From Paramoeba atlantica (Eukaryota > Protista > Discosea), in contig CDRNVI010000106.1 in assembly GCA_977017575.1 (NCBI GenBank), positions 1-38,005 on the forward strand: DNA of 38,005 nucleotides. The letters run 5' to 3'. The position numbers and the translations under genes were made by a program. Positions 1 to 38,005 of the stretch are shown one piece after another. Below the pieces are notes generated by a model that saw only the letters and a program-made list of their open reading frames with translations, was not told where the DNA came from and made no database searches. Positions within the stretch are counted from its first letter, which is position 1. The number at the start of each line of letters is the position of its first letter.

Positions 1-1
1 A

Positions 2-157: not shown

Positions 158-163
158 TAAGGA
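158..163 (+). promoter_or_regulatory. Shine-Dalgarno site for the ACP gene
   Basis: TAAGGA ending 8 nt before ATG 172. Confidence 0.7.
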
Positions 164-171
164 ATAATAAC

Positions 172-1614: not shown

Positions 1615-1636
1615 CCATTTCTGTCATGAAATCTTA

Positions 1637-1966: not shown

Positions 1967-3078
1967 CCATTGCAACACAGACTGTTATCAAACACTATGG
2001 TAAACATTATGTTGATCATGCCATCTTATTTCGTTCATTAGCAGATACCATCGACGACCAACCGGATGTGATTTTTGATTATGTTGATCAACAACCCGTT
2101 AGTGATTTATATACGCTACGCACATTGGATGCTGAGCGATTCTTTAAATTATACGAAGCCTCAGCTTATGGTGATGTTGGGGTGTTATTTGCTTGCCCAA
2201 GAACGTGTTTATCTGGCATTTTATTACAAATCATTGGCAATCAGTCACAACAAGATGATTATTTTGATTATGTTTCTACGCAAACAGCACGGACGTTCTT
2301 TGCGACTACTGAAGTGAATTTTGGTTCAGATGTCAGTCATATTGAAACCCAATTCATTCAAGAAAAATCGAAAGATAGCATTGCCATCACAGGCAAAAAA
2401 TTGTTAGTGGGCAATCTTGGTATTGCTAATATTGGGATTATTATTGGCAGAGTAGGGACGAGTCCACTCGGATTAACCGCAGCATTGATCAAGCCAGCTG
2501 ATTTTACCAATAATATCGATAGGGTCGATCGACAAACATTGCCAATGTTTGGGATTAAGCCAGCTTTATTAGGCAAAGCTGTATTTAAGCAATTTATGAT
2601 TCCGGCTAATCAACTGTTAGGTCAACAGATTCATCCAATGCAACGTGGGTTATCCGCTATTGTTAACACCTTTAATATTATGCGTTTGGCGATTGCCGGG
2701 CTTGCATTAGGACATGCCCAAGCAATGCTCGATTATATTTATACAACCAGAGCACGCATTAACACACATGAATCAACTAGATTATCCATTTGGCAATCCA
2801 CGTTGTCTGCTATCCGCAAAAAAGCACTGATTGCAGCCAATTATCATAATAAAATTGGAGTAAACACAGCGAATATTTCCCTAGTTAAAGTTCAATCAAG
2901 CCAATTGGTTGAGGCAATCGCAATGCATGCACATGAATTTTATGGTGAAGCATTTCTTTACGAACATCCTTATTTGCTTAAATCACTGCGCGATTGTTTT
3001 GCCTATGAGTATATGGATGGCACTAGCAATATTCAACGCAACAATATTTATCAAGGGTTTGCCCATGTTCGATGTTAG
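1963..3078 (+). CDS. Acyl-CoA/acyl-ACP dehydrogenase (FAD-dependent)
   Basis: Motifs FFATTEVNFGSD, ITGKKLLVGN, FNIMRLAIAGLALGHAQAMLDY, YEYMDGTSNIQR. ATG 1963 has AAGGA at 1948-1952 and is preferred over the track's 1915 start. Confidence 0.85.
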   Translation: MTIATQTVIKHYGKHYVDHAILFRSLADTIDDQPDVIFDYVDQQPVSDLYTLRTLDAERFFKLYEASAYGDVGVLFACPRTCLSGILLQIIGNQSQQDDYFDYVSTQTARTFFATTEVNFGSDVSHIETQFIQEKSKDSIAITGKKLLVGNLGIANIGIIIGRVGTSPLGLTAALIKPADFTNNIDRVDRQTLPMFGIKPALLGKAVFKQFMIPANQLLGQQIHPMQRGLSAIVNTFNIMRLAIAGLALGHAQAMLDYIYTTRARINTHESTRLSIWQSTLSAIRKKALIAANYHNKIGVNTANISLVKVQSSQLVEAIAMHAHEFYGEAFLYEHPYLLKSLRDCFAYEYMDGTSNIQRNNIYQGFAHVRC

Positions 3079-4373
3079 GCTAACCAAACAAACTGTCACA
3101 ATTGCTGTGCCTATTTTGATATCGAGCATTGCGGTATTAGTCAGTGTGATCACCAATGCGACCACTGTTAGTCATGCTAACGTGTCTAATTGGTATATAT
3201 TAACCTGTTATTTGCCGATCAGTCATTTAATATTGGGGTTGCTAGAATCAGGTCGAGTCTGTTGCATTACAGGTATTGGGAAGCACAGCAAATTATATCC
3301 AATTAAACACTGTACTGTGCTATCTGCATATTACAGTTTGCCATTTCTACTGATCTCACTATTGTTAATGGTTATGGCCACTGTTAAATTAAACCCATTT
3401 AACGTATCAACAATCCACTATGATACGTTCACCAAATTTGCTGCACTGTACTCATTAAGTTATAGCATTGTATCAGCCAACTCAATCTGTAATGCTGCAT
3501 TATTTGCTCTGGGTAACAGTGTGTTAGCTTGCATGAGTATTGTGATAACCAGCTTGCTTGCTATATTGTTTACTCACATTATTTTTTATCAGTTTGAGAT
3601 GGGGATATATGCCATTATTGTTGGCAATGCGATTGCGTACACGCTAGGTTTGATAGTGTCAATCATCATGATATTACTCACTACCCAACAGAAAGATGAT
3701 GTTGGGTACGCTTATTGGGAAAGGGGTTATCAACTGTGTCGAACAATCGGTTTACCTATAGTCTTGATCTATATTGCACTACCCATCGGTATTTATTTAG
3801 TAATTCATTATTTATCCGCGATTAATCAAGATGCACTCACCGGTTTTGGTATCGCTTACCGTATTCAGAGTATTATTCTATTACCAGCAGTGGCATTAGG
3901 GATTGCAGCTGGGATCAATAGCAATCGTAGTCATCACGCAACAGAAAAATACCATATTATCACCCATACCGTAATATTGACATGTATTGTTTATATTCCA
4001 ATTGTTACCACAACACTATTATTATCAGATCAAAATTAGCCAACTACTCACTCAAGATAAACACATACAAACAGTTATTCACGATTATTTTCACTATGTA
4101 TCTTGGTCGTATCTATTATATTGTCCCTTAGTCAGTGTCATTTCGATCTTGGAGCAAACCGGATTTGCTATCAAAAGTTTACTATTAAATATAGCGTTTC
4201 TGCTTGCCCAAATTGGGTTAGCGATGTATGTGGCGACATATCATTATTCAATTATTGATTTTTCCAGGCTGTTAACCGTCATTATGAGCATGGTGTCTAT
4301 CGTATTCATTACGATGATATTGTTGAATCATCACGGTTCAAAAAAACAGTATGGAAAATGGATATATGATTAA
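3065..4373 (+). pseudogene. MATE-like multi-pass exporter split by a +1 frameshift
   Basis: Hydrophobic ORFs 3065-4039 and ~4036-4373 with GFGIAYRIQSIILLPAVALG and ISQLLTQD motifs. Removing one A from the A4 run at 4032-4035 gives one ~435-aa ORF (..SDQ-ISQLL..). Could be a sequencing error. Confidence 0.7.
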
Positions 4374-5916
4374 TAGTTTAACCGATTATTTGGTTCGGTC
4401 AGCCGAACAACAGCCAGAAAAATTGGCCTTAGTGACAGATAAAGGCAGTTTAACGTACGCAGAACTGCTTAATATAGCCAACAGTGTTGCCAATTATTTA
4501 AAGCATCTTGGGATACACCATGCTGACCACATTGTATTGGCACTGGGTAATACAGTTGAAACAGTCATTTGTTTTTGGGGGGCATTACTAGCAGATGCCA
4601 TTGTCAGCATTATTGATCATCAACAGCCTCAAGAAAAAATAGCATATATCCTCAATGATCTGCATGCTAGTTGTGTCATTACGGATAACTGTTCACAACA
4701 CAGCCACCCATTTTCCAAACTTAAACATGAATTACATTGGTTAACGAGTGAGATAGTAGAACAATCTCAATCCCATTCTTCTGATCTCAACCTAAACACA
4801 CAGCATCTTGATATTGACTTGGCATCAATTATTTATACCTCTGGTTCAACGGGTGAACCTAAAGGGGTGATGTTAACTCACCGTAATATGCTAGCAGCTG
4901 CCGAATCGATTAACCATTATTTGAATCACTCAGATAATGATACGGTTATCTGTGCATTGCCATTATCATTTGATTATGGGTTGTATCAACTGATCATGAT
5001 GACAGCTGTCACTGGGACAGTCATCTTAGAAAAAGATTTGTTATTGCCGAGCCAATTGTTAAAGCACATTGAACAATATAACGTAACTGGCTTGCCACTG
5101 GTGCCGAGCATGGTGCTGTTACTTGTCAAGTTTAATCAACTGAAAACCTACGACTTAACCAGTATTCGTTATGTGACTAATACCGGCGCTCAATTGATGC
5201 CAAGCTATATTGATGCGATCAACACATTACTGCCACACGCCAAGCTCTTTTCAATGTATGGATTAACAGAATGCAAACGTTGTACGTATTTACCAGCTGA
5301 TCATGTGGATAAAAAACCAACGAGCATTGGGATCCCCATTCCTAACACGCAAATGTGGATTGTTGATGATGCTGGGCAGCGCTGCGGACCCAATCAGTTA
5401 GGTGAAATCGTAGTACGTGGACAAACAGTGATGCAGGGGTATTGGAATAAGCCTGAAGAAAGTTGCCAGAAATTAAAACCGGGACGATTACCTAATGAAT
5501 ACCTATTATTTACCGGTGATCTGGGCTGGATGGATAACGATGGCTATTTTTATTTTCATGGCAGGTTAGATGATGTGATTAAATCAAGGGGTATGAAAGT
5601 CAGTCCAAGAGAAATTGAAATGATAGTCAGTCAACACCAGGATATTATCGAAGTTGCTGCAGTAGGAGTAGCCGATCCCCCAAATGGACAAGCCATCGTG
5701 TTGTTTGTGTCATTATCCAATCATAACATCACTACTGAACGATTAACGGTGTTTTGCAAACGGGCATTGCAACCACATGAACAGCTAGTTGAGATCATCA
5801 TTGAAACGACATTACCTAAAACAGCCAATAGAAAAATTGACAAGCGTGCCTTAGTTAAATTATATCAGGATAACAATCACACTATGCGTGAAAGTAATAT
5901 ACTCAAAGCATTTTGA
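4366..5916 (+). CDS. AMP-dependent acyl-CoA/acyl-ACP ligase (ANL superfamily)
   Basis: IIYTSGSTGEPKG, LPLSFDYGLYQ, MYGLTECKR, FTGDLG, GRLDDVIKSRGMKVSP, LPKTANRKID. ATG 4366 overlaps the previous stop (ATGATTAA). Confidence 0.9.
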   Translation: MINSLTDYLVRSAEQQPEKLALVTDKGSLTYAELLNIANSVANYLKHLGIHHADHIVLALGNTVETVICFWGALLADAIVSIIDHQQPQEKIAYILNDLHASCVITDNCSQHSHPFSKLKHELHWLTSEIVEQSQSHSSDLNLNTQHLDIDLASIIYTSGSTGEPKGVMLTHRNMLAAAESINHYLNHSDNDTVICALPLSFDYGLYQLIMMTAVTGTVILEKDLLLPSQLLKHIEQYNVTGLPLVPSMVLLLVKFNQLKTYDLTSIRYVTNTGAQLMPSYIDAINTLLPHAKLFSMYGLTECKRCTYLPADHVDKKPTSIGIPIPNTQMWIVDDAGQRCGPNQLGEIVVRGQTVMQGYWNKPEESCQKLKPGRLPNEYLLFTGDLGWMDNDGYFYFHGRLDDVIKSRGMKVSPREIEMIVSQHQDIIEVAAVGVADPPNGQAIVLFVSLSNHNITTERLTVFCKRALQPHEQLVEIIIETTLPKTANRKIDKRALVKLYQDNNHTMRESNILKAF

Positions 5917-5988
5917 ATGTAGGCAAGGCGCAGGCAACAAAGCATAAATTTAAAACGCGAAGAGTATAGCATTGAAGGATGAACTGTT

Positions 5989-7554
5989 ATGCACAGCAAT
6001 GTGGGTAGTATGTTGCTCGATACAACAAGGCAATATGCAGAAAAAATTGCAATAGAATGCCAACATGAACAGTTGACGTATGGTGATTTGTTTTGGCAGG
6101 CAATGCCATTAATTGACGTGCTCATTGCGAACAAACAACAGCATGTTGCGATATTAATGGAAAGGGATGTGAGTACTTACTACGTTATATATGCCTGTTT
6201 TTTATCTGGGAAAGTGTATATGCCACTCTCGCCATCATTTGGTGATACTAGAATTGTTAATATGCTTCTTCAGACAAAGACTACGTTAGTGATTGTAGAT
6301 GCTAAACACCATGAGCGATTAACAAAAATAATCAATAACATTGATAAATGCATTGATACTATCTGCTATGAAGATCTACAACGTGCCAAATTAAAGTTGC
6401 CTAGCCAATCAGATATATTATCCAATATCTCAGTGCCAAATTCACGTAATGCGTACATTATGTTTACCTCTGGCAGCACCGGCGTTCCCAAAGCCATTGT
6501 GATTTCCCAGCAGCAATTAATTAATTATTTAAACAGGATGATACAACAATATCACCCTAATCAAACAGACCGATTTTCTCAAGTGATCGAATTTACCTTT
6601 GATTTATCGATACATGACATTTTATTGTGTTGGTCAGTAGGCGCAACGTTATTACCCTTTAATGGGGACAGTTATTTTCAATTACACCATTATATTAAAA
6701 CAGCACGACCGACGTTTTGGTTGTCTGTACCATCAACAGGGTTAGCATTAGACAGAGCAAAGTTAATAAAATCGGATTGTTACCCGAGTTTACGCGTAGT
6801 GTTGTTTTGTGGTGAGCCATTACCTTACTCATTAGCTGCCAAATGGCAACATGCTTGTCCTCACGCCAGCATAGACAATCTATATGGGCCAACCGAAGCG
6901 ACTATTGCATTTACCACCTTTCGGTTTAGTCAACCTATAGATAATGCTTCTCAACAAATAGTACCCATCGGGAAACCATTGCCAGGATTGAAAATTCGCA
7001 TTGTTAATCATGAATTAAACCAATGCCAGCCTAGTGAAATTGGGGAATTGTTACTGGGTGGTGATCAACTAATTAATGGCTATTTAACTAATTCAAACAC
7101 TGAAAAATTTATTACAACGCAAGATGGATTAAGTTGGTATAAAACTGGTGATTTGGCATGCATTGATGAGCATCATATCTTGCATTATAAAGGCCGTATT
7201 GATGATCAATTTAATGTCAGAGGCCAACGTGTTGAACGACTTGATTTAGAGAGTCAATTCAAACAAGTCTTAAACTTATCAAGCTTAGCGATTATTCCAT
7301 CTCCTGTGACTGAAGAAGGATTGGTGCTAGGCATTTCTCTTATTTACACCTCAACTGAAAAGCTGACAAAACAGACGATCATTAAATACTGTAGACATAC
7401 GATAGCATTATCGTGCTACCTATCAGCGTGTATCCGTGTTAATGAATTCCCAACAAATGCCAGTGGCAAGCTAGATTATAATGGCTTAAAACATCGTTAC
7501 CAACAGATCAGTTATCAAACAAGTACTGATCGTAAGGTGGGTGTGCATGACTAA
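5989..7554 (+). CDS. Stand-alone amino acid adenylation enzyme, DltA-like
   Basis: YIMFTSGSTGVPK, FTFDLS, LFCGE, NLYGPTEAT, YKTGDL, GRIDDQFNVRGQRVE, NASGKLD. GAAGGA at 5974-5979. Confidence 0.9.
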   Translation: MHSNVGSMLLDTTRQYAEKIAIECQHEQLTYGDLFWQAMPLIDVLIANKQQHVAILMERDVSTYYVIYACFLSGKVYMPLSPSFGDTRIVNMLLQTKTTLVIVDAKHHERLTKIINNIDKCIDTICYEDLQRAKLKLPSQSDILSNISVPNSRNAYIMFTSGSTGVPKAIVISQQQLINYLNRMIQQYHPNQTDRFSQVIEFTFDLSIHDILLCWSVGATLLPFNGDSYFQLHHYIKTARPTFWLSVPSTGLALDRAKLIKSDCYPSLRVVLFCGEPLPYSLAAKWQHACPHASIDNLYGPTEATIAFTTFRFSQPIDNASQQIVPIGKPLPGLKIRIVNHELNQCQPSEIGELLLGGDQLINGYLTNSNTEKFITTQDGLSWYKTGDLACIDEHHILHYKGRIDDQFNVRGQRVERLDLESQFKQVLNLSSLAIIPSPVTEEGLVLGISLIYTSTEKLTKQTIIKYCRHTIALSCYLSACIRVNEFPTNASGKLDYNGLKHRYQQISYQTSTDRKVGVHD

Positions 7555-8170
7555 TTTAATTGCCACCCAATTTGCTACCGATAACATTGTTAATATTAGA
7601 GAATGCTATAACAAACTTAATGTTAGCAAACTACAAGCCAGAGTATTTAACGATTTTTATGCTATTCGCACAGTGGCACTGTGTGAAGATAAAGGATTGG
7701 AAGAATTACTTTGTGAATCCATTCAAGCCACATTAGCTGGAAAGGTAAATCCTCAACAAATCGATTATGTAATCTTTGCGCACACCAGCTTAACCAACGC
7801 ACCATTTGCCTATGGATTATTAAATAGGGTTGTTACACAGTGTGGTTTAACCAATGCAACCTATTTTGGGGTAAATCTGAATAATTGTGCATCAACTGTT
7901 GAAGCCTTTTCTATCGTATCCACCTTGTTTTCTGCCAATAGCCAGGCGAAGTATAGTGTAGTGATCTCAGGTGACCGCATATTTACTAAACAACATCGAT
8001 TGTTACATAACGCGTCGATTGCAGGAGATGCTGCAGGTGCTGCTTTATTTGCTCAAACAACACAGTTTCACCACGGATTAAGATTATTATGTACGCAAAA
8101 ATGCCTATTCCCACAATTTTACAAAGGTGCATGGTTATCTGGTCAGCAAGCGCAAGCACTAGAGGCTATT
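7547..8170 (+). pseudogene. KAS III (FabH-like) condensing/transacylating enzyme, truncated at the junction after ~208 codons
   Basis: ATGACTAA overlap with the upstream stop. FGVNLNNCAS keeps the catalytic Cys; VISGD and GDAAGAALF are present. The C-terminal His/Asn half is missing, and the tail to 8269 is read-through into the repeat. Confidence 0.8.
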
Positions 8171-8181
8171 GGCGCGTTTTT
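8171..8181 (+). other. Junction: last 6 nt of tRNA-Ser (GGCGCG) plus T5 terminator fused to bacterial-type DNA
   Basis: ...GAGGCTATT|GGCGCGTTTTTGCGATTC here versus ...CCTGCTG|GGCGCGTTTTTGCGATTC in full units. Identity to the array starts at 8171. Confidence 0.9.
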
Positions 8182-9461
8182 GCGATTCTCTTCGTTCACA
8201 ATCGTGTGGCCGCTTTTGGGCGCGCGCGAGAGACGCAACGTGAATCGCAGAAGCAATGGTACATTTTAGGGTATTTTCTTTGCTGAAATGAAGTCTTTTT
8301 GGCCTGTGTAGCAGATGACGTTTTGGCGGCAGAGACGGTGAATGGGTAGATGGCCGTGCGCGTGTCAAATGTAAAAGCCCGAAAAGTGTACCGCTTTTTA
8401 GCGCATCATATCTTAAAATTCAAAATGACGTCAGATTTACCTCTTTCCGCCTGCACGGTGAAGGGGGGTTTTCAGATATCTCTGGACGCGACGTTTGCAT
8501 GACTTCCGTGCATGGCGTGCGTCGATTGCGAAACGCCGAACCAGCAAGCTACACCTCCTGAGTGGTCGTGCTTCGCGCGATATTTTCTGTAGAGATAGAG
8601 TTTTTCCGTTAGTCAGTATGATTGCGAAACAAAACGTGGGTTTCGCCAGTCCACTTTTTGTCCGTTCTTCCCTGAATCAAATCTTAAACAATTTTAACCC
8701 TTTCTAATTGATGAGCGTTCTGATCGCTCGTGCTTTGCTCTGATATTTGCTTTGGGCACTCTTTTCACATGATTTCACTGATACTATAAGACTTCCCCTC
8801 TTCTAACGCAAGAATTTGTTGTCATCGGACATTCTTTTAGTCAAATCAATGCTTGATTGCACAAGCTTCCTGCATCTCAAGGGGGGGGGTTGTATTTCTC
8901 TACACCTCTTTCACTTTTCACCTGCTCTTCCAAGCAACAGGGTCACAGGGCGCGCGCGTATTGTAATAGTGTGGTGGAAAAACGTCGGTTTCACACGAAA
9001 CTCGCATCCACCGTGCGACCCCATTCCGTGGAGAACGATCTTTGTTTTCTTCGATCGCACTGATTCCGTTAGATGCACAGAGCGTGATTTCACGTGAATC
9101 GAACAATTCCGCGAGATGTTTTACTTGGGGCAAAGCAGGGCAGCACATGAACAATGAAAACAGGACGCGCAATGGCGCGGAACACCTTCCACGTGACACC
9201 TTCCGAAACGCGTTCTGCACAATCCAGGTATAAAACAACGAATTTCTTCGCCCGGCCGTTGCAAAGACCCACCCCTTACCGATAGATTTCGTAGCTCTGC
9301 TCTAAACGTGAACGCATCGTGCTCAACCTCTCTTCCCGACTATGTCATCGCAAAAATTGTATGTGTCACTTCTGGGCCGTTCGCATGGGCATGTGTTGGG
9401 CACACTCAAACCCCCATTGCATTCATCAATGCGACCTACGGTTGTGAATGTCGCCTTGCTT

Positions 9462-22368: not shown

Positions 22369-22381
22369 ATTGTAATAGTGT
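22369..22381 (+). repeat. 13-bp target-site duplication, left copy (right copy 23930-23942)
   Basis: Empty: GCGCGT-ATTGTAATAGTGT-GGTGG. Filled: GCGCGT-ATTGTAATAGTGT-CTTG...GGAGG-ATTGTAATAGTGT-GGTGG. The first A could also belong to the tail. Confidence 0.93.
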
Positions 22382-23878
22382 CTTGTTGACTCTTACCGCT
22401 ATCTGGGAAACATTCAGGATTCAGGCGTTTCTTCGCCAGTAAAAGACCGCTTAAGGCTCACCTGGGCCGCATTTCGGAAGCTCAAGGGCATTTGGGACTC
22501 GCCACTGAGTGCATCAACAAAACTGCGTTTGTTTGATTGCCTCGTTTACCCAATCATGACCTTTGGTGCCGCTTCGCTTTCCATATCCAACAAAATGCTT
22601 CGGCAAACAGAAGTTGAGCTCAATATGATGCGAAGATTTTGCTGTAATTGTGCTAAATTGGACGAGTTTGGACACTGCTACCCTATCGAGTCACTTTATT
22701 GCGGCACTCCTCGTTTCTCCACCGTACATCGCGTTAGTCGGGCTAAAATTGTTGGTCACATTCTAAGGCACTCATTCATGTTTCGAGATCTTATCCAGTG
22801 GAAATGCAGCGATAGGAAACGAAATCTCTCACCAAGCGAAGCTTGCTTTCACGATCTGGACATTACCGAAGAACAAGCCCTCGTATACGCTCAGGATCGA
22901 GATCACTGGAAAAAGTTATGTGAAGATTTAAAGGTAGCACTCGAACCGCTTCCGGATTACGAAAGACTCTCTTCTCCTAGATGGAAAAGTAAACATGCCC
23001 ACGCCTTGAAGCAAGATACGCCTTACGATTTGCAATTTGTCGAAGAAAGTTCTGATCCTTTTCCATTAAAAGATGATGAGGTTCACTTCTATATTGATGG
23101 TTCAGTCCGTGCCTTGCGGGTGACAAACGAGATCAGAGCAGGTGCTGGAATTGTTGTGCTTCAACGATGGACAACCGATAAATGTTTTTCCTTAACATTA
23201 GATGTTGATAGTGCCGAGCAAGCTGAGGCTGAATCTTTTCGAGAGGCGCTTAAAAGAATACCGGACGGAGCAAAAGATATCGTAGTACACACAGATTCGT
23301 TCTATGTGTGGAACTTCTTTCATCACGTTCGCATCCGGAGACGGGTAATAGGGTATGACCGCGTCGTCAACAGAAACATTCTACAAGATATAGATCATCA
23401 GGTGCGGAAACTAAAATCTCAGAATGTTAATTTGTATGTGTGCAAAGTTAAATCTCATAATGGGAACGAATATAACGACAAAGCTGATGTCTTGGCTCTT
23501 TCGGCGTCACGAAGGCCGTTAAAATCACAAGAGGCAAAGAGGTTGAAGACGACAAAAGCTCCTTCTTCTTCTTCTTCTGACCCAATATCCTCGCCAGAAG
23601 CGACACTCATATTGCGCCCAAGAAGGAATGTTGACACTATTTCATCCAAACGCAAGAATAACACTACTGCAAGTGGGGCTCTATCCAAAAAGGGTAGCTC
23701 ACTGTCTGGAGAGCCTGGAGTGAAACCGTCTGAAAAAACGAATGCTATGATCCTGAGTAGGCCTGATGTCGGTAAAGAAAAAAGTTGCAAGGGAAATAGG
23801 GAGTCTGATAAGATCGTGGAAACAAAGGGAAAGAAGTCTCCCAAGAGAAAGAAGGCTTCACGAAAATTAGAACAGTAG
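22382..23878 (+). CDS. Retrotransposon ORF remnant, 498 aa, no native start: RT domain 7/thumb, RNase H, basic tail
   Basis: Extends the track ORF 49 codons upstream: LVDSYRYLGNIQDSGVSSPVKDRLRLTWAAFRKLKGIWDSPLSASTKLRLFDCLVYPIMTFG. Later AQDRDHWK. RNase H (~23081-23508) has YIDGS, SAEQAE, VHTDS and KSHNGNEYNDKADVLA. Confidence 0.9.
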   Translation, partial: LVDSYRYLGNIQDSGVSSPVKDRLRLTWAAFRKLKGIWDSPLSASTKLRLFDCLVYPIMTFGAASLSISNKMLRQTEVELNMMRRFCCNCAKLDEFGHCYPIESLYCGTPRFSTVHRVSRAKIVGHILRHSFMFRDLIQWKCSDRKRNLSPSEACFHDLDITEEQALVYAQDRDHWKKLCEDLKVALEPLPDYERLSSPRWKSKHAHALKQDTPYDLQFVEESSDPFPLKDDEVHFYIDGSVRALRVTNEIRAGAGIVVLQRWTTDKCFSLTLDVDSAEQAEAESFREALKRIPDGAKDIVVHTDSFYVWNFFHHVRIRRRVIGYDRVVNRNILQDIDHQVRKLKSQNVNLYVCKVKSHNGNEYNDKADVLALSASRRPLKSQEAKRLKTTKAPSSSSSDPISSPEATLILRPRRNVDTISSKRKNNTTASGALSKKGSSLSGEPGVKPSEKTNAMILSRPDVGKEKSCKGNRESDKIVETKGKKSPKRKKASRKLEQ

Positions 23879-23886
23879 TATCTTTA

Positions 23887-23903
23887 ATCGGTTTTTAACC
23901 GAT
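23887..23903 (+). other. 3'-UTR hairpin of the retroelement
   Basis: Perfect 7-bp inverted repeat ATCGGTT-TTT-AACCGAT just before the TAGGA tail. Confidence 0.7.
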
Positions 23904-24554
23904 CTATTAGGATAGGATAGGATAGGAGGATTGTAATAGTGTGGTGGAAAAACGTCGGTTTCACACGAAACTCGCATCCACCGTGCGACCCCATTCCGTG
24001 GAGAACGATCTTTGTTTTCTTCGATCGCACTGATTCCGTTAGATGCACAGAGCGTGATTTCACGTGAATCGAACAATTCCGCGAGATGTTTTACTTGGGG
24101 CAAAGCAGGGCAGCACATGAACAATGAAAACAGGACGCGCAATGGCGCGGAACACCTTCCACGTGACACCTTCCGAAACGCGTTCTGCACAATCCAGGTA
24201 TAAAACAACGAATTTCTTCGCCCGGCCGTTGCAAAGACCCACCCCTTACCGATAGATTTCGTAGCTCTGCTCTAAACGTGAACGCATCGTGCTCAACCTC
24301 TCTTCCCGACTATGTCATCGCAAAAATTGTATGTGTCACTTCTGGGCCGTTCGCATGGGCATGTGTTGGGCACACTCAAACCCCCATTTCATTCATCAAT
24401 GCGACCTACGGTTGTGAATGTCGCCTTGCTTGGGGGGGGGGGGCTGTAAGGATCGTTAAGCGAGCGAAATCGGGGAGTTTCCATTATGACATGAATTAGC
24501 AAGGTAAAGTGCACCGCTATGGACACACAAAATTCGAGACACACCACGACGGAA

Positions 24555-24635
24555 GCGTCCATACCCAAGTGGTTAAGGGGCCTGACTTGAAATCAGGTGT
24601 GTTCTCACGCGCAGGTTCGAACCCTGCTGGGCGCG
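24555..24635 (+). tRNA. tRNA-Ser(UGA), copy 10
   Basis: Same sequence as copy 1. Confidence 0.95.
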
Positions 24636-25431: not shown

Positions 25432-26928
25432 CTTGTTGACTCTTACCGCTATCTGGGAAACATTCAGGATTCAGGCGTTTCTTCGCCAGTAAAAGACCGC
25501 TTAAGGCTCACCTGGGCCGCATTTCGGAAGCTCAAGGGCATTTGGGACTCGCCACTGAGTGCATCAACAAAACTGCGTTTGTTTGATTGCCTCGTTTACC
25601 CAATCATGACCTTTGGTGCCGCTTCGCTTTCCATATCCAACAAAATGCTTCGGCAAACAGAAGTTGAGCTCAATATGATGCGAAGATTTTGCTGTAATTG
25701 TGCTAAATTGGACGAGTTTGGACACTGCTACCCTATCGAGTCACTTTATTGCGGCACTCCTCGTTTCTCCACCGTACATCGCGTTAGTCGGGCTAAAATT
25801 GTTGGTCACATTCTAAGGCACTCATTCATGTTTCGAGATCTTATCCAGTGGAAATGCAGCGATAGGAAACGAAATCTCTCACCAAGCGAAGCTTGCTTTC
25901 ACGATCTGGACATTACCGAAGAACAAGCCCTCGTATACGCTCAGGATCGAGATCACTGGAAAAAGTTATGTGAAGATTTAAAGGTAGCACTCGAACCGCT
26001 TCCGGATTACGAAAGACTCTCTTCTCCTAGATGGAAAAGTAAACATGCCCACGCCTTGAAGCAAGATACGCCTTACGATTTGCAATTTGTCGAAGAAAGT
26101 TCTGATCCTTTTCCATTAAAAGATGATGAGGTTCACTTCTATATTGATGGTTCAGTCCGTGCCTTGCGGGTGACAAACGAGATCAGAGCAGGTGCTGGAA
26201 TTGTTGTGCTTCAACGATGGACAACCGATAAATGTTTTTCCTTAACATTAGATGTTGATAGTGCCGAGCAAGCTGAGGCTGAATCTTTTCGAGAGGCGCT
26301 TAAAAGAATACCGGACGGAGCAAAAGATATCGTAGTACACACAGATTCGTTCTATGTGTGGAACTTCTTTCATCACGTTCGCATCCGGAGACGGGTAATA
26401 GGGTATGACCGCGTCGTCAACAGAAACATTCTACAAGATATAGATCATCAGGTGCGGAAACTAAAATCTCAGAATGTTAATTTGTATGTGTGCAAAGTTA
26501 AATCTCATAATGGGAACGAATATAACGACAAAGCTGATGTCTTGGCTCTTTCGGCGTCACGAAGGCCGTTAAAATCACAAGAGGCAAAGAGGTTGAAGAC
26601 GACAAAAGCTCCTTCTTCTTCTTCTTCTGACCCAATATCCTCGCCAGAAGCGACACTCATATTGCGCCCAAGAAGGAATGTTGACACTATTTCATCCAAA
26701 CGCAAGAATAACACTACTGCAAGTGGGGCTCTATCCAAAAAGGGTAGCTCACTGTCTGGAGAGCCTGGAGTGAAACCGTCTGAAAAAACGAATGCTATGA
26801 TCCTGAGTAGGCCTGATGTCGGTAAAGAAAAAAGTTGCAAGGGAAATAGGGAGTCTGATAAGATCGTGGAAACAAAGGGAAAGAAGTCTCCCAAGAGAAA
26901 GAAGGCTTCACGAAAATTAGAACAGTAG
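25432..26928 (+). CDS. RT-thumb/RNase H ORF remnant, copy 2
   Basis: Translation identical to copy 1. Confidence 0.9.
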   Translation, partial: LVDSYRYLGNIQDSGVSSPVKDRLRLTWAAFRKLKGIWDSPLSASTKLRLFDCLVYPIMTFGAASLSISNKMLRQTEVELNMMRRFCCNCAKLDEFGHCYPIESLYCGTPRFSTVHRVSRAKIVGHILRHSFMFRDLIQWKCSDRKRNLSPSEACFHDLDITEEQALVYAQDRDHWKKLCEDLKVALEPLPDYERLSSPRWKSKHAHALKQDTPYDLQFVEESSDPFPLKDDEVHFYIDGSVRALRVTNEIRAGAGIVVLQRWTTDKCFSLTLDVDSAEQAEAESFREALKRIPDGAKDIVVHTDSFYVWNFFHHVRIRRRVIGYDRVVNRNILQDIDHQVRKLKSQNVNLYVCKVKSHNGNEYNDKADVLALSASRRPLKSQEAKRLKTTKAPSSSSSDPISSPEATLILRPRRNVDTISSKRKNNTTASGALSKKGSSLSGEPGVKPSEKTNAMILSRPDVGKEKSCKGNRESDKIVETKGKKSPKRKKASRKLEQ

Positions 26929-26979
26929 TATCTTTAATCGGTTTTTAACCGATCTATTAGGATAGGATAGGATAGGAGG
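25432..26979 (+). mobile_element. Non-LTR retrotransposon, copy 2
   Basis: Same ends, TSD and tail as copy 1. Confidence 0.93.
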
Positions 26980-28483: not shown

Positions 28484-29980
28484 CTTGTTGACTCTTACCG
28501 CTATCTGGGAAACATTCAGGATTCAGGCGTTTCTTCGCCAGTAAAAGACCGCTTAAGGCTCACCTGGGCCGCATTTCGGAAGCTCAAGGGCATTTGGGAC
28601 TCGCCACTGAGTGCATCAACAAAACTGCGTTTGTTTGATTGCCTCGTTTACCCAATCATGACCTTTGGTGCCGCTTCGCTTTCCATATCCAACAAAATGC
28701 TTCGGCAAACAGAAGTTGAGCTCAATATGATGCGAAGATTTTGCTGTAATTGTGCTAAATTGGACGAGTTTGGACACTGCTACCCTATCGAGTCACTTTA
28801 TTGCGGCACTCCTCGTTTCTCCACCGTACATCGCGTTAGTCGGGCTAAAATTGTTGGTCACATTCTAAGGCACTCATTCATGTTTCGAGATCTTATCCAG
28901 TGGAAATGCAGCGATAGGAAACGAAATCTCTCACCAAGCGAAGCTTGCTTTCACGATCTGGACATTACCGAAGAACAAGCCCTCGTATACGCTCAGGATC
29001 GAGATCACTGGAAAAAGTTATGTGAAGATTTAAAGGTAGCACTCGAACCGCTTCCGGATTACGAAAGACTCTCTTCTCCTAGATGGAAAAGTAAACATGC
29101 CCACGCCTTGAAGCAAGATACGCCTTACGATTTGCAATTTGTCGAAGAAAGTTCTGATCCTTTTCCATTAAAAGATGATGAGGTTCACTTCTATATTGAT
29201 GGTTCAGTCCGTGCCTTGCGGGTGACAAACGAGATCAGAGCAGGTGCTGGAATTGTTGTGCTTCAACGATGGACAACCGATAAATGTTTTTCCTTAACAT
29301 TAGATGTTGATAGTGCCGAGCAAGCTGAGGCTGAATCTTTTCGAGAGGCGCTTAAAAGAATACCGGACGGAGCAAAAGATATCGTAGTACACACAGATTC
29401 GTTCTATGTGTGGAACTTCTTTCATCACGTTCGCATCCGGAGACGGGTAATAGGGTATGACCGCGTCGTCAACAGAAACATTCTACAAGATATAGATCAT
29501 CAGGTGCGGAAACTAAAATCTCAGAATGTTAATTTGTATGTGTGCAAAGTTAAATCTCATAATGGGAACGAATATAACGACAAAGCTGATGTCTTGGCTC
29601 TTTCGGCGTCACGAAGGCCGTTAAAATCACAAGAGGCAAAGAGGTTGAAGACGACAAAAGCTCCTTCTTCTTCTTCTTCTGACCCAATATCCTCGCCAGA
29701 AGCGACACTCATATTGCGCCCAAGAAGGAATGTTGACACTATTTCATCCAAACGCAAGAATAACACTACTGCAAGTGGGGCTCTATCCAAAAAGGGTAGC
29801 TCACTGTCTGGAGAGCCTGGAGTGAAACCGTCTGAAAAAACGAATGCTATGATCCTGAGTAGGCCTGATGTCGGTAAAGAAAAAAGTTGCAAGGGAAATA
29901 GGGAGTCTGATAAGATCGTGGAAACAAAGGGAAAGAAGTCTCCCAAGAGAAAGAAGGCTTCACGAAAATTAGAACAGTAG
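28484..29980 (+). CDS. RT-thumb/RNase H ORF remnant, copy 3
   Basis: Translation identical to copy 1. Confidence 0.9.
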   Translation, partial: LVDSYRYLGNIQDSGVSSPVKDRLRLTWAAFRKLKGIWDSPLSASTKLRLFDCLVYPIMTFGAASLSISNKMLRQTEVELNMMRRFCCNCAKLDEFGHCYPIESLYCGTPRFSTVHRVSRAKIVGHILRHSFMFRDLIQWKCSDRKRNLSPSEACFHDLDITEEQALVYAQDRDHWKKLCEDLKVALEPLPDYERLSSPRWKSKHAHALKQDTPYDLQFVEESSDPFPLKDDEVHFYIDGSVRALRVTNEIRAGAGIVVLQRWTTDKCFSLTLDVDSAEQAEAESFREALKRIPDGAKDIVVHTDSFYVWNFFHHVRIRRRVIGYDRVVNRNILQDIDHQVRKLKSQNVNLYVCKVKSHNGNEYNDKADVLALSASRRPLKSQEAKRLKTTKAPSSSSSDPISSPEATLILRPRRNVDTISSKRKNNTTASGALSKKGSSLSGEPGVKPSEKTNAMILSRPDVGKEKSCKGNRESDKIVETKGKKSPKRKKASRKLEQ

Positions 29981-30031
29981 TATCTTTAATCGGTTTTTAA
30001 CCGATCTATTAGGATAGGATAGGATAGGAGG
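28484..30031 (+). mobile_element. Non-LTR retrotransposon, copy 3
   Basis: Same ends, TSD and tail as copy 1. Confidence 0.93.
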
Positions 30032-31537: not shown

Positions 31538-33034
31538 CTTGTTGACTCTTACCGCTATCTGGGAAACATTCAGGATTCAGGCGTTTCTTCGCCAGTAAAA
31601 GACCGCTTAAGGCTCACCTGGGCCGCATTTCGGAAGCTCAAGGGCATTTGGGACTCGCCACTGAGTGCATCAACAAAACTGCGTTTGTTTGATTGCCTCG
31701 TTTACCCAATCATGACCTTTGGTGCCGCTTCGCTTTCCATATCCAACAAAATGCTTCGGCAAACAGAAGTTGAGCTCAATATGATGCGAAGATTTTGCTG
31801 TAATTGTGCTAAATTGGACGAGTTTGGACACTGCTACCCTATCGAGTCACTTTATTGCGGCACTCCTCGTTTCTCCACCGTACATCGCGTTAGTCGGGCT
31901 AAAATTGTTGGTCACATTCTAAGGCACTCATTCATGTTTCGAGATCTTATCCAGTGGAAATGCAGCGATAGGAAACGAAATCTCTCACCAAGCGAAGCTT
32001 GCTTTCACGATCTGGACATTACCGAAGAACAAGCCCTCGTATACGCTCAGGATCGAGATCACTGGAAAAAGTTATGTGAAGATTTAAAGGTAGCACTCGA
32101 ACCGCTTCCGGATTACGAAAGACTCTCTTCTCCTAGATGGAAAAGTAAACATGCCCACGCCTTGAAGCAAGATACGCCTTACGATTTGCAATTTGTCGAA
32201 GAAAGTTCTGATCCTTTTCCATTAAAAGATGATGAGGTTCACTTCTATATTGATGGTTCAGTCCGTGCCTTGCGGGTGACAAACGAGATCAGAGCAGGTG
32301 CTGGAATTGTTGTGCTTCAACGATGGACAACCGATAAATGTTTTTCCTTAACATTAGATGTTGATAGTGCCGAGCAAGCTGAGGCTGAATCTTTTCGAGA
32401 GGCGCTTAAAAGAATACCGGACGGAGCAAAAGATATCGTAGTACACACAGATTCGTTCTATGTGTGGAACTTCTTTCATCACGTTCGCATCCGGAGACGG
32501 GTAATAGGGTATGACCGCGTCGTCAACAGAAACATTCTACAAGATATAGATCATCAGGTGCGGAAACTAAAATCTCAGAATGTTAATTTGTATGTGTGCA
32601 AAGTTAAATCTCATAATGGGAACGAATATAACGACAAAGCTGATGTCTTGGCTCTTTCGGCGTCACGAAGGCCGTTAAAATCACAAGAGGCAAAGAGGTT
32701 GAAGACGACAAAAGCTCCTTCTTCTTCTTCTTCTGACCCAATATCCTCGCCAGAAGCGACACTCATATTGCGCCCAAGAAGGAATGTTGACACTATTTCA
32801 TCCAAACGCAAGAATAACACTACTGCAAGTGGGGCTCTATCCAAAAAGGGTAGCTCACTGTCTGGAGAGCCTGGAGTGAAACCGTCTGAAAAAACGAATG
32901 CTATGATCCTGAGTAGGCCTGATGTCGGTAAAGAAAAAAGTTGCAAGGGAAATAGGGAGTCTGATAAGATCGTGGAAACAAAGGGAAAGAAGTCTCCCAA
33001 GAGAAAGAAGGCTTCACGAAAATTAGAACAGTAG
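31538..33034 (+). CDS. RT-thumb/RNase H ORF remnant, copy 4
   Basis: Translation identical to copy 1. Confidence 0.9.
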   Translation, partial: LVDSYRYLGNIQDSGVSSPVKDRLRLTWAAFRKLKGIWDSPLSASTKLRLFDCLVYPIMTFGAASLSISNKMLRQTEVELNMMRRFCCNCAKLDEFGHCYPIESLYCGTPRFSTVHRVSRAKIVGHILRHSFMFRDLIQWKCSDRKRNLSPSEACFHDLDITEEQALVYAQDRDHWKKLCEDLKVALEPLPDYERLSSPRWKSKHAHALKQDTPYDLQFVEESSDPFPLKDDEVHFYIDGSVRALRVTNEIRAGAGIVVLQRWTTDKCFSLTLDVDSAEQAEAESFREALKRIPDGAKDIVVHTDSFYVWNFFHHVRIRRRVIGYDRVVNRNILQDIDHQVRKLKSQNVNLYVCKVKSHNGNEYNDKADVLALSASRRPLKSQEAKRLKTTKAPSSSSSDPISSPEATLILRPRRNVDTISSKRKNNTTASGALSKKGSSLSGEPGVKPSEKTNAMILSRPDVGKEKSCKGNRESDKIVETKGKKSPKRKKASRKLEQ

Positions 33035-33085
33035 TATCTTTAATCGGTTTTTAACCGATCTATTAGGATAGGATAGGATAGGAGG
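31538..33085 (+). mobile_element. Non-LTR retrotransposon, copy 4
   Basis: Same ends, TSD and tail as copy 1. Confidence 0.93.
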
Positions 33086-34592: not shown

Positions 34593-36089
34593 CTTGTTGA
34601 CTCTTACCGCTATCTGGGAAACATTCAGGATTCAGGCGTTTCTTCGCCAGTAAAAGACCGCTTAAGGCTCACCTGGGCCGCATTTCGGAAGCTCAAGGGC
34701 ATTTGGGACTCGCCACTGAGTGCATCAACAAAACTGCGTTTGTTTGATTGCCTCGTTTACCCAATCATGACCTTTGGTGCCGCTTCGCTTTCCATATCCA
34801 ACAAAATGCTTCGGCAAACAGAAGTTGAGCTCAATATGATGCGAAGATTTTGCTGTAATTGTGCTAAATTGGACGAGTTTGGACACTGCTACCCTATCGA
34901 GTCACTTTATTGCGGCACTCCTCGTTTCTCCACCGTACATCGCGTTAGTCGGGCTAAAATTGTTGGTCACATTCTAAGGCACTCATTCATGTTTCGAGAT
35001 CTTATCCAGTGGAAATGCAGCGATAGGAAACGAAATCTCTCACCAAGCGAAGCTTGCTTTCACGATCTGGACATTACCGAAGAACAAGCCCTCGTATACG
35101 CTCAGGATCGAGATCACTGGAAAAAGTTATGTGAAGATTTAAAGGTAGCACTCGAACCGCTTCCGGATTACGAAAGACTCTCTTCTCCTAGATGGAAAAG
35201 TAAACATGCCCACGCCTTGAAGCAAGATACGCCTTACGATTTGCAATTTGTCGAAGAAAGTTCTGATCCTTTTCCATTAAAAGATGATGAGGTTCACTTC
35301 TATATTGATGGTTCAGTCCGTGCCTTGCGGGTGACAAACGAGATCAGAGCAGGTGCTGGAATTGTTGTGCTTCAACGATGGACAACCGATAAATGTTTTT
35401 CCTTAACATTAGATGTTGATAGTGCCGAGCAAGCTGAGGCTGAATCTTTTCGAGAGGCGCTTAAAAGAATACCGGACGGAGCAAAAGATATCGTAGTACA
35501 CACAGATTCGTTCTATGTGTGGAACTTCTTTCATCACGTTCGCATCCGGAGACGGGTAATAGGGTATGACCGCGTCGTCAACAGAAACATTCTACAAGAT
35601 ATAGATCATCAGGTGCGGAAACTAAAATCTCAGAATGTTAATTTGTATGTGTGCAAAGTTAAATCTCATAATGGGAACGAATATAACGACAAAGCTGATG
35701 TCTTGGCTCTTTCGGCGTCACGAAGGCCGTTAAAATCACAAGAGGCAAAGAGGTTGAAGACGACAAAAGCTCCTTCTTCTTCTTCTTCTGACCCAATATC
35801 CTCGCCAGAAGCGACACTCATATTGCGCCCAAGAAGGAATGTTGACACTATTTCATCCAAACGCAAGAATAACACTACTGCAAGTGGGGCTCTATCCAAA
35901 AAGGGTAGCTCACTGTCTGGAGAGCCTGGAGTGAAACCGTCTGAAAAAACGAATGCTATGATCCTGAGTAGGCCTGATGTCGGTAAAGAAAAAAGTTGCA
36001 AGGGAAATAGGGAGTCTGATAAGATCGTGGAAACAAAGGGAAAGAAGTCTCCCAAGAGAAAGAAGGCTTCACGAAAATTAGAACAGTAG
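34593..36089 (+). CDS. RT-thumb/RNase H ORF remnant, copy 5
   Basis: Translation identical to copy 1. Confidence 0.9.
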   Translation, partial: LVDSYRYLGNIQDSGVSSPVKDRLRLTWAAFRKLKGIWDSPLSASTKLRLFDCLVYPIMTFGAASLSISNKMLRQTEVELNMMRRFCCNCAKLDEFGHCYPIESLYCGTPRFSTVHRVSRAKIVGHILRHSFMFRDLIQWKCSDRKRNLSPSEACFHDLDITEEQALVYAQDRDHWKKLCEDLKVALEPLPDYERLSSPRWKSKHAHALKQDTPYDLQFVEESSDPFPLKDDEVHFYIDGSVRALRVTNEIRAGAGIVVLQRWTTDKCFSLTLDVDSAEQAEAESFREALKRIPDGAKDIVVHTDSFYVWNFFHHVRIRRRVIGYDRVVNRNILQDIDHQVRKLKSQNVNLYVCKVKSHNGNEYNDKADVLALSASRRPLKSQEAKRLKTTKAPSSSSSDPISSPEATLILRPRRNVDTISSKRKNNTTASGALSKKGSSLSGEPGVKPSEKTNAMILSRPDVGKEKSCKGNRESDKIVETKGKKSPKRKKASRKLEQ

Positions 36090-36140
36090 TATCTTTAATC
36101 GGTTTTTAACCGATCTATTAGGATAGGATAGGATAGGAGG
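34593..36140 (+). mobile_element. Non-LTR retrotransposon, copy 5
   Basis: Same ends, TSD and tail as copy 1. Confidence 0.93.
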
Positions 36141-37643: not shown

Positions 37644-38005
37644 CTTGTTGACTCTTACCGCTATCTGGGAAACATTCAGGATTCAGGCGTTTCTTCGCCA
37701 GTAAAAGACCGCTTAAGGCTCACCTGGGCCGCATTTCGGAAGCTCAAGGGCATTTGGGACTCGCCACTGAGTGCATCAACAAAACTGCGTTTGTTTGATT
37801 GCCTCGTTTACCCAATCATGACCTTTGGTGCCGCTTCGCTTTCCATATCCAACAAAATGCTTCGGCAAACAGAAGTTGAGCTCAATATGATGCGAAGATT
37901 TTGCTGTAATTGTGCTAAATTGGACGAGTTTGGACACTGCTACCCTATCGAGTCACTTTATTGCGGCACTCCTCGTTTCTCCACCGTACATCGCGTTAGT
38001 CGGGC
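37644..38005 (+). mobile_element. Non-LTR retrotransposon, copy 6 (runs off the window end)
   Basis: Same 5' junction ATTGTAATAGTGT|CTTGTTGAC at 37631-37652. Confidence 0.9.

What the first reader, a model, noticed from the sequence alone, without database searches (positions are those of the whole stretch)
22382..23929. RTE-like non-LTR retrotransposon with an intact C-terminal RNase H, inserted in a tRNA array spacer
Seen: 1548-bp insert, 13-bp TSD, tandem-repeat tail, 5' truncation right at RT domain 7 (VDSYRYLG). It continues R..W.AF.KL..IW.S.LS..TKLRLF...V.P...FG and AQDR..W, then an RNase H with all D-E-D-H-D residues, then a ~120-aa Ser/Lys-rich tail. Established: these features are hallmarks of target-primed reverse transcription. 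The post-RT motifs are typical of RTE-clade LINEs, which classically lack RNase H (it is typical of I-group clades such as I, R1, Tad1, Ingi, and of some plant L1). Known tRNA-associated LINEs (Dictyostelium TRE, fish Dewa) are L1/Tx1-type. Inference: a possibly undescribed RTE-related lineage that gained RNase H and may target this spacer. Only one insertion event is evidenced here, so site specificity is unproven.
Basis: partly seen in the sequence, partly recalled or inferred. Interest (0 to 1): 0.85.

Follow-up and report, generated by a model that had tools for sequence, protein, structure and literature searches.

The report
Dead LINE copy multiplied in tRNA array
This is a cut-short, dead copy of a jumping gene that landed once in a spacer of a repeated tRNA-Ser gene array and was then multiplied with the array. 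Its intact relatives belong to an apparently undescribed RTE-like lineage that carries an extra RNase H domain, but it does not aim at this site.

Summary
A 1548-bp insert lies at 22382-23929, flanked by an exact 13-bp duplication, and empty units show the precise unfilled site. It starts at RT motif 7, keeps an RNase H with all five catalytic residues, a basic Ser/Lys tail and a (TAGGA)4 end.

- **Parent element.** It is the last third of a 4566-bp LINE. An intact copy on another contig encodes one 1483-aa protein: APE endonuclease, RT (YADD), RNase H.
- **Not site-specific.** At least five other insertions lie at unrelated sites with different duplications. The 13-14 array copies share one truncation point and are 99.9-100% identical, so one insertion was amplified with its unit.
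- **Clade.** The RT trees put the family in a 100/99-supported RNase H-bearing clade known only from unnamed metagenome proteins. That clade is nested among compact elements without RNase H and lies next to sequences whose motifs match published RTE and RTE-X. The motifs do not fit Ingi or the I group.
- **Limit.** No labelled Repbase reference could be loaded, so the RTE-group placement is about 65% likely, not proven.
- **Earlier scan notes.** Others in this scan described the family's 18-bp repeat heads on other DNA and called such elements Ingi-like.

Verdict: real but dead copy; new variant of a known kind; moderate interest.

The parts
22369..22381 (+). Left copy of the 13-bp target-site duplication ATTGTAATAGTGT
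   Evidence: It is single in empty units and duplicated around every insert.
22382..23929 (+). 5'-truncated LINE copy: nt 3022-4566 of the 4566-bp full-length element
   Evidence: 99.4% identical to the intact copy L032:505-5070:-. The upstream element sequence is present in the C7, C43 and C87 copies.
22382..22996 (+). C-terminal part of the RT, from motif 7 (VDSYRYLG) through the post-RT region ending in AQDRDHW
   Evidence: Translation. Corresponds to residues 986-1190 of the full protein. Weak DUF6451 match at residues 30-52.
23078..23506 (+). RNase H domain, with catalytic codons D 23096-23098, E 23225-23227, D 23294-23296, H 23456-23458 and D 23486-23488
   Evidence: Pfam PF00075 at E 7e-14. 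Invariant columns in alignment A1. Coordinates.
23507..23881 (+). Basic Ser/Lys-rich C-terminal tail and stop codon
   Evidence: In the 118 aa counted: K 21, S 18, pI 10.4. Only 34% identical to the sister family, but still basic there.
23887..23903 (+). Candidate 3'-UTR hairpin (7-bp stem, 3-nt loop) just before the tail
   Evidence: Present in the minimum-energy fold. A hairpin sits at the same place in the sister family and in a metagenome relative. The fold energy is not better than shuffles, so this is a lead only.
23908..23929 (+). 3' tail: (TAGGA)4 plus GG
   Evidence: The same pentamer tail ends copies on C7, C43 and C87, the sister family, and a relative from a public metagenome.
23930..23942 (+). 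Right copy of the target-site duplication
25432..26979 (+). Identical copy in the next array unit
   Evidence: 0 differences, same duplication.
28484..30031 (+). Identical copy in the next array unit
   Evidence: 0 differences, same duplication.
31538..33085 (+). Identical copy in the next array unit
   Evidence: 0 differences, same duplication.
34593..36140 (+). Identical copy in the next array unit
   Evidence: 0 differences, same duplication.
37644..38005 (+). Start of a sixth copy, cut by the contig end
21505..21585 (+). tRNA-Ser(UGA) gene upstream of the insert, 797 bp away
   Evidence: ARAGORN.
24555..24635 (+). tRNA-Ser(UGA) gene downstream of the insert, 626 bp away
   Evidence: ARAGORN.

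Best explanation
The stretch is a dead-on-arrival, 5'-truncated copy of a young, low-copy 4.57-kb LINE.

The parent element encodes one 1483-aa protein: APE endonuclease, reverse transcriptase, RNase H, then a basic tail. It has a very short 5' leader made of 18-bp repeats. Its roughly 50-nt 3' UTR has a candidate hairpin and ends in a (TAGGA)n tail.

Shown: one insertion occurred in the spacer of a tRNA-Ser(UGA) array unit, with a 13-bp duplication. Inferred: the endonuclease nicked the spacer, reverse transcription started at the pentamer tail, and it stopped or switched 1548 nt in.

Shown: every filled unit carries the same truncation point, duplication and sequence. Inferred: the filled 3.05-kb unit spread by unequal crossing-over or conversion within the array.

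The RNase H frame is intact only because the copy is young. It has no start codon or promoter of its own.

The family belongs to an RNase H-bearing clade of RTE-group-like LINEs found so far only in this euglenozoan-type protist and in unnamed metagenome proteins. In that clade, the RNase H was most likely added to the C-terminal end of a compact APE-RT ancestor. The element does not target this site or tRNA genes.
For: - **Insertion anatomy:**
- **Full-length copy and domains:**
- **One event, amplified:** 13 full copies on C106, C96 and C56 share start, duplication and tail, and are 99.9-100% identical.
- **Other insertions:** C7 is truncated at nt 960 with duplication ATCACCCTTT. C29/C49 has duplication TTGAGTTTTTA. 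C43, C87 and C1 all have different flanks. Only C29/C49 has tRNA genes nearby.
- **RNase H under constraint:** between families, dN is 0.31, like the endonuclease at 0.33, while dS is saturated.
- **Relatives:** 13 metagenome proteins at 37-76% identity, 10 of them with RNase H on record (the other three end at or just after the RT). 39 cluster representatives have a family-type RNase H at E below 1e-30. None of those looked up carries an organism name.
- **RT tree:** the RNase H clade has 100/99 support. Its sister P0014/P0015 and the wider 36-row clade lack RNase H. RTE-type sequences are the next group, an RTE-X-type sequence lies outside that, and L1-type further out.
- **Labels:** sequences classed as RTE, RTE-X and Ingi in PMC10294476 Data S2 and Tables S5/S7 were compared with my motif table. 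'Group B' matches RTE almost letter for letter.
- **The element's own motifs:** NWRPICLV, GILQGDVLAPYLFVLVVD and LTDINYADDIALLA share RTE features (NWR, xQG[C/D], VD, TDxxYADDIALL). They lack the I-group GVPQG...INDL.
Against: - No labelled reference sequence could be placed in the tree. The clade names rest on motif matching by eye and on which database proteins score best.
- No I-group or Jockey-group sequence is in the tree. Only one PQGS-type hit came up, at E 8e-11, and it was left out of the careful tree.
- The join between the 36-row clade and the RTE group is only 88/95.
- The host has a kinetoplastid-type spliced leader, and the resident APE LINE of kinetoplastids is Ingi, which has the same domain order. 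Other first readers called sister elements 'Ingi-like'.
- The nearest RNase H outside the family belongs to another LINE, P0259. RNase H could therefore be older in this group, with losses, rather than newly gained.
- Expression and array structure could not be checked with reads.
Confidence: 0.65

Rival explanations
1. The family is a member of the Ingi clade (I group), the usual APE-RT-RNase H LINE of kinetoplastids. On this reading RNase H is ancestral and nothing is new.
For: - Kinetoplastid-type spliced-leader sequence at 11 loci, none in the control.
- Same single-ORF domain order as Ingi/L1Tc (PMC12278014).
- Duplications of 10-13 bp.
- Other readers labelled sister elements Ingi-like.
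Against: - The RT motifs differ from sequences classed as Ingi in PMC10294476: SYRPISLT, GVPQGGVLSP...INDL and ALYADDLVMW against NWRPICLV, GILQGDVLAP...VVD and INYADDIALLA.
- No trypanosomatid, Bodo or Perkinsela protein is among the 127 hits, and none appears among the 120 listed, although such proteins are named in public sets.
- No poly(A) tail.
- No HDV-like ribozyme or other Rfam match at the 5' end.
- The 5' end is an 18-bp repeat, not a 77-nt Pr77-type leader.
- No C-terminal zinc finger.
Confidence: 0.12
2. The family belongs to another already named clade reported to carry RNase H (such as Proto1), or to a named RTE-group clade (RTETP, Proto2) whose RNase H-bearing members are already in Repbase.
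For: - Proto1 is listed among RNase H-bearing clades (PMC4640811).
- I could not obtain any Proto1 or RTETP sequence or description.
Against: - L1-type hits (with zf-RVT) are far away, at E about 1e-10 and 20% identity, outside RTE and RTE-X in the tree.
- The Proto2 motifs read do not match.
- Full-text searches found no paper on RNase H in RTE-type elements.
Confidence: 0.12
3. The element targets this array spacer or tRNA genes, and the many copies are repeated independent hits.
For: - 13-14 copies sit at the same 13-bp site.
- A second insertion (C29/C49) lies 439 bp from a tRNA Asp-Gly-His-Arg cluster.
Against: - All array copies share one 5' truncation point and tail, and are 99.9-100% identical.
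- The insertions on C7, C43, C87 and C1 have no tRNA gene in the fetched flanks, and their duplications differ.
- The genome has about 3400 tRNA-like candidates, so two of about seven landings near a tRNA is unremarkable.
Confidence: 0.03
4. The open RNase H frame in the array is a domesticated or expressed host gene.
For: 498 codons are open and identical in every unit.
Against: - No ATG at the start of the frame; the listed ORF begins at a TTG inside it.
- The sequence is 99.4% identical to the mobile element, so there has been no time for selection to act.
- An earlier follow-up in this genome reached the same conclusion for similar 'stand-alone' RNase H frames.
Confidence: 0.02

Closest known systems
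RTE clade / RTE group of non-LTR retrotransposons (RTE-1, BovB, RTE-X)
   Same: - One ORF with an N-terminal APE endonuclease followed by RT.
- No ORF1.
- Very short 3' UTR ending in a short tandem repeat instead of poly(A).
- RT motifs NWR..., xQG[C/D], ...VD and TDxx[FY]ADDIALL.
- Post-RT R..W.AF..L..IW and AQDR..W.
- RTE-type proteins are the best-scoring relatives I could assign to a named clade, and the adjacent group in the tree.
   Different: - Carries a C-terminal RNase H plus a basic tail (about 290 aa extra).
- Has a longer N-terminus and a longer APE-RT linker: 1483 aa and 4.57 kb, against about 1000 aa and 3.2-4 kb.
- Motif 4 reads LQGDVLAP, not [KR]QGC.LSP.
- Forms its own 100/99 clade, apart from the sequences that match labelled RTE.
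Ingi clade (ingi, L1Tc) of trypanosomatids
   Same: Single ORF with APE, RT and RNase H; duplications of about 12 bp; a host with a kinetoplastid-type spliced leader.
   Different: No poly(A) tail, no Pr77-type leader or ribozyme match, no zinc finger. The RT motifs lack the I-group PQG/INDL signature. No similarity hit to trypanosomatid proteins.
Other LINE lineages that added RNase H secondarily (plant L1, oomycete Utopia)
   Same: A modular gain of RNase H within a lineage whose relatives lack it (PMC4640811).
   Different: - Those domains are 'archaeal-like', with R in place of the catalytic H. In Utopia the domain lies upstream of the RT.
- Here the domain is downstream of the RT and keeps D-E-D-H-D.
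- Its nearest outside relatives are another LINE's RNase H and cellular RNase H1 or HI.
tRNA-gene-associated LINEs (Dictyostelium TRE)
   Same: A copy lies between tRNA genes.
   Different: No fixed distance or repeated independent hits; most insertions are away from tRNA genes.

Membership tests
Non-LTR retrotransposon insertion by target-primed reverse transcription | Target-site duplication around the insert, with a precise empty site | tested here: met
   13-bp duplication; the empty units read straight through.
Non-LTR retrotransposon insertion by target-primed reverse transcription | Variable 5' truncation with a constant 3' end among copies | tested here: met
   The 5' ends fall at nt 1-9, 38, 111, 960 and 3022. 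All copies end in the (TAGGA)n tail.
RTE clade / RTE group | RT groups with RTE references in a phylogeny | tested here: inconclusive
   No labelled reference could be loaded. In the tree the family's 36-row clade joins, at 88/95, the group whose motifs match published RTE. An RTE-X-type sequence lies outside. No I-group or Jockey-group sequences were included.
RTE clade / RTE group | Single ORF, APE then RT, no ORF1 | tested here: met
   One 1483-aa ORF with APE at 191-443 and RT at 732-994.
RTE clade / RTE group | ORF ends soon after the RT; no RNase H; compact element of about 3.2-4 kb | tested here: not met
   RNase H at 1218-1360 plus a tail; element length 4566 bp.
RTE clade / RTE group | Short 3' UTR ending in short tandem repeats rather than poly(A) | tested here: met
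   About 50 nt, ending in (TAGGA)n.
Ingi clade | APE-RT-RNase H in one ORF | tested here: met
Ingi clade | RT of I-group type, grouping with ingi/L1Tc | tested here: not met
   Motifs differ from sequences classed as Ingi in PMC10294476. No trypanosomatid hit. This was a test by motif and similarity rank, not by a labelled tree.
Ingi clade | Pr77-type 5' leader with HDV-like ribozyme, and a poly(A) tail (trypanosomatid members) | tested here: not met
   The 5' end is an 18-bp repeat with about 60 nt before the ATG. No Rfam match. The tail is (TAGGA)n.
Site-specific / tRNA-targeting LINE | Independent insertions recur at one sequence or at a fixed distance from tRNA genes | tested here: not met
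   The three readable duplications all differ. Four of six loci have no tRNA gene in the fetched flanks.
Proto1 clade | RT groups with Proto1 references | not testable with these tools
   No Proto1 sequence or description could be obtained.

The most novel reading that the evidence does not exclude
A so far unnamed clade of RTE-group LINEs is widespread in uncultured protists and present as several families in this euglenozoan. It added an RNase H to the C-terminal end of a compact APE-RT protein, independently of the I group, plant L1 and Utopia. Its sister lineages still show the RNase H-less state.
Probability: 0.5. Interest if true: 0.55.

Novelty: new variant of a known kind. Interest (0 to 1): 0.45.

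Why it matters
RNase H is taken as a marker that separates LINE groups, and its gains and losses are used to argue how retroelements assemble from modules. An RTE-type lineage that carries RNase H, with close sisters that lack it, would add another natural case of domain gain. The before and after states would both be available for comparison.

It would also caution against classing LINEs by domain order alone. Here the same elements were called both 'RTE-like' and 'Ingi-like' within one scan.

The window copy itself has no function. Its value is as a dated marker showing that this tRNA array turns over by unit duplication.

Tried and rejected
- **Labelled references.** Kapitonov 2009 and Kojima 2011 are not held. 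The RTclass1 FASTA supplement of PMC3708506 is not held. The PDB holds only R2 and L1. Cluster look-ups gave no clade or organism names. The Atlas gave only generic APE-RT clusters.
- **Published alignment.** I did not copy reference sequences from the supplement of PMC10294476 into a script, because long strings without a reference are not to be typed. A labelled tree was therefore left out. I compared short motifs by eye instead.
- **RNase H word search.** A word-based search with the RNase H part alone found only two close relatives. The exhaustive profile search replaced it.
- **Rfam.** No ribozyme or other family at the 5' end.
- **3' hairpin.** It is no more stable than shuffled sequence. 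I kept it as a lead only.
- **dN/dS between families.** dS is saturated, so only dN is informative.
- **Two-genome idea.** The literature suggested an amoeba plus a kinetoplastid endosymbiont. I dropped it because the same retroelement families occur on contigs with and without spliced-leader hits.
- **Third protein search.** No query seemed likely to return clade-labelled names.
Full report
**1. The observation**

The window is a whole 38-kb contig (G000:C106). From about 8.2 kb onward it is a tandem array of tRNA-Ser(UGA) genes. Nine units of about 1490 bp are followed by units of about 3052 bp.

The 13-mer ATTGTAATAGTGT occurs once in each short unit and twice, 1561 bp apart, in each long unit. 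That is 20 matches against 0.03 expected. The short units read straight through the site.

The 1548 bp between the two 13-mers (22382-23929) translate as one open frame of 498 codons. The frame begins LVDSYRYLG and ends at a stop at 23879-23881. Pfam finds RNase H at residues 233-375 with E 7e-14. The residues D239, E282, D305, H359 and D369 fall in invariant columns of a family alignment. The 3' end is four TAGGA units plus GG.

One correction is needed. The window carries five identical copies and the start of a sixth. Contigs C96 and C56 carry eight more full copies, and C96 also starts with a partial one.

**2. What it is part of**

Copies on four other loci continue upstream with a shared sequence. 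Pairwise comparison defines a 4566-bp element.

The copy on C43 has one intact ORF of 1483 aa. It contains an Exo_endo_phos endonuclease at 191-443 and RVT_1 at 732-994 with YADD. When the C-terminal part is scanned on its own, it shows RNase H. The window copy starts at nt 3022, which is residue 986, and is 99.4% identical to that element.

The element's 5' end is made of 18-bp repeats: 2-3 units on C87 and a long array on C43. Its 3' UTR is about 50 nt, with a small hairpin before the pentamer tail. The sister family (76% identical in the RT region) and a 70%-identical relative from a public metagenome have the same layout. The hairpin is no more stable than shuffles.

**3. One event or many; targeting**

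All array copies share the same first base, the same duplication and the same tail, and differ by at most one base. Independent target-primed events would differ in truncation point. The copies were therefore multiplied with the array unit.

Filled and empty units are interspersed. C56 has a single filled unit among empty ones, and on C96 the spacing alternates. This fits unequal crossing-over.

Elsewhere the family has inserted at unrelated places:

| Locus | 5' end | Duplication / flanks |
|---|---|---|
| C7 | nt 960 | ATCACCCTTT |
| C29 and C49 (a duplicated segment) | nt 38 | TTGAGTTTTTA |
| C43 | full length | different flanks |
| C87 (two copies in a duplicated segment) | nt 9 | different flanks |
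| C1 | nt 111 | different flanks |

Only the C29/C49 site has tRNA genes nearby, 439 bp away. With about 3400 tRNA-like candidates in 45.7 Mb, two of about seven landings near a tRNA is unremarkable. Site specificity is refuted. A weak tRNA bias is not supported.

**4. Which kind of LINE**

*Host.* The host has a kinetoplastid/diplonemid-type spliced-leader sequence at 11 loci, with none in the control. It is crowded with retroelements: 1851 RVT_1 candidates. Other first readers used the Ingi label for sister elements.

*Relatives.* The closest database proteins are 13 unnamed metagenome proteins at 37-76% identity. Ten of them have RNase H on record, and the other three end at or just after the RT. 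Next come many compact APE-RT proteins of about 1000 aa at 26-34% identity. No trypanosomatid, Bodo or Perkinsela protein appears. An exhaustive profile search with the RNase H domain finds 39 cluster representatives at E below 1e-30, all fragments or full copies of the same kind. After those come cellular RNase H1 or HI. None of those looked up has an organism name.

*RT tree.* I rooted the tree on restriction-like-endonuclease families of the same genome. A careful run gave ultrafast bootstrap / SH-aLRT supports:
- The element, three other families of this genome and ten metagenome proteins form an RNase H-bearing clade (100/99).
- Its sister pair P0014/P0015 lacks RNase H (100/99).
- Both lie in a 36-row clade (100/99) of elements that otherwise end 0-108 aa after the RT.
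- That clade joins, at 88/95, a group containing 'group B'. P0110 lies outside it (94/92), and L1-type hits lie further out.

*Labels.* To name these groups I read labelled sequences in Data S2 and Tables S5/S7 of PMC10294476 and compared them with my motif table.
- Group B matches RTE almost letter for letter (NWRGITLL, QAGFRKGRSC, GV[RK]QGC.LSP, LEDLDFADDIALLS).
- P0110 matches RTE-X (GV.QGENLSPFLF..FLN, LLYADDT).
- Sequences classed as Ingi read SYRPISLT, GVPQGGVLSP...INDL and ALYADDLVMW.
- The element reads NWRPICLV, QFGFRPERST, GILQGDVLAPYLFVLVVD and LTDINYADDIALLA.

This is RTE-like, and it lacks the PQG/INDL signature seen here in the Ingi- and CR1-classed sequences of that alignment. 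From memory it marks the I and Jockey groups generally. Only one PQGS-type protein was hit at all, at E 8e-11.

*Other Ingi features.* The element also lacks poly(A), a Pr77-type leader, any Rfam ribozyme and a zinc finger.

I therefore place the family in or beside the RTE group, as a separate clade, with about 65% confidence. This is not a labelled phylogeny, and I say so.

**5. The RNase H**

[quoted passage not shown] My full-text searches found no later report.

In the RT tree the label 'has RNase H' needs at least three changes: the clade, P0088 and P0259. In a quick RNase H tree the family's domains form one group (96). P0259's domain is their sister (97). P0088's domain lies elsewhere.

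The simplest reading is a single addition at the base of the 14-row clade, placed directly after the AQDR..W end of a compact ancestor. An older presence with losses, or a transfer between LINEs, is not excluded.

The domain is under constraint. Between families its dN is 0.31, like the endonuclease at 0.33, with dS saturated.

**6. Mechanism**

Shown:
- the anatomy of the insertion;
- the parent's coding capacity;
- the amplification with the array unit;
- the non-specific targets.

Inferred:
- The endonuclease nicks the bottom strand at the left edge of the duplication.
- The RT primes on the (TAGGA)n end of its own RNA, perhaps recognising the adjacent hairpin, as 'stringent' LINEs do.
- The RNase H removes the RNA from the hybrid.
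- The basic tail binds nucleic acid.
- The second nick falls 10-13 bp away.

The window copy is dead on arrival. Its open frame reflects youth, not use, in line with an earlier follow-up on similar RNase H frames in this genome.

**7. Verdict**

It is wrong about targeting. The copy itself is ordinary. The lineage is a new variant of a known kind, pending a check against Repbase and Dfam.

Reads could not be consulted. The labelled-reference tree was left out because the reference sequences have no session reference.

Noticed in passing
window 1-8170: The first 8 kb have 38% G+C against 48% in the array. Other readers noted a bacterial-looking gene cluster and an abrupt junction at about 8150-8200. 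This could be a chimeric contig or a transfer.
   Followed up: no
L032:5071-5700 (C43), L042 upstream of 6638, L051 upstream of 5493: Each family of this LINE clade starts with its own 18-bp tandem repeat: TATAAAGAACACACTTTT, TTTTTTGTAAGACCATCG or AAGCTTGTAAATTTTATT. The number of units ranges from 2-3 to dozens. An earlier follow-up describes heads of up to more than 430 units.
   Followed up: partly
L031:5925-5952 (C7 copy, 5' junction): Eleven extra bases (ATAGGGTGACC) lie between the duplication ATCACCCTTT and the truncated 5' end. They are nearly the reverse complement of the duplication itself, which suggests a snap-back or template switch at the end of reverse transcription.
   Followed up: no
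L033 / L034 (C87:66-76 kb and 95-105 kb): Two copies of the element share flanks, so they lie in a segmental duplication. One of them is split by a 3.5-kb insertion. The C29 and C49 copies also share flanks.
   Followed up: partly
L038:7130-7584 and L039:7200-7654: A tight cluster of tRNA-Asp, Gly, His and Arg genes, 50-60 bp apart, is duplicated between C29 and C49.
   Followed up: no
L045-L049, L052: Several families have intact ORFs of 1529-1637 aa with RT and, in most, a weak zf-RVT match, but no APE domain. They are probably restriction-like-endonuclease LINEs (CRE-like). They gave the strongest RVT_1 matches in the genome.
   Followed up: partly
L053:1054-4407 (C27): An APE-RT family of 1118 aa without RNase H, on a long branch near the RTE-type group. 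About 280 nt downstream of its stop codon lies an (ATC)n run that may be its tail; I did not map the element's 3' end.
   Followed up: partly
P0259 (ENA metagenome protein, 1546 aa): A second APE-RT-RNase H LINE with RQGC-type RT motifs. It falls near the RTE-type group, and its RNase H is the sister of this family's RNase H. RNase H in RTE-like LINEs may be more widespread than one clade.
   Followed up: partly
G000 contigs C137-C185: Most of the best-scoring tRNA matches lie many to a contig on high-numbered contigs, out of about 3400 candidates in all. They could be arrays, tRNA-derived SINEs or non-host contigs.
   Followed up: no
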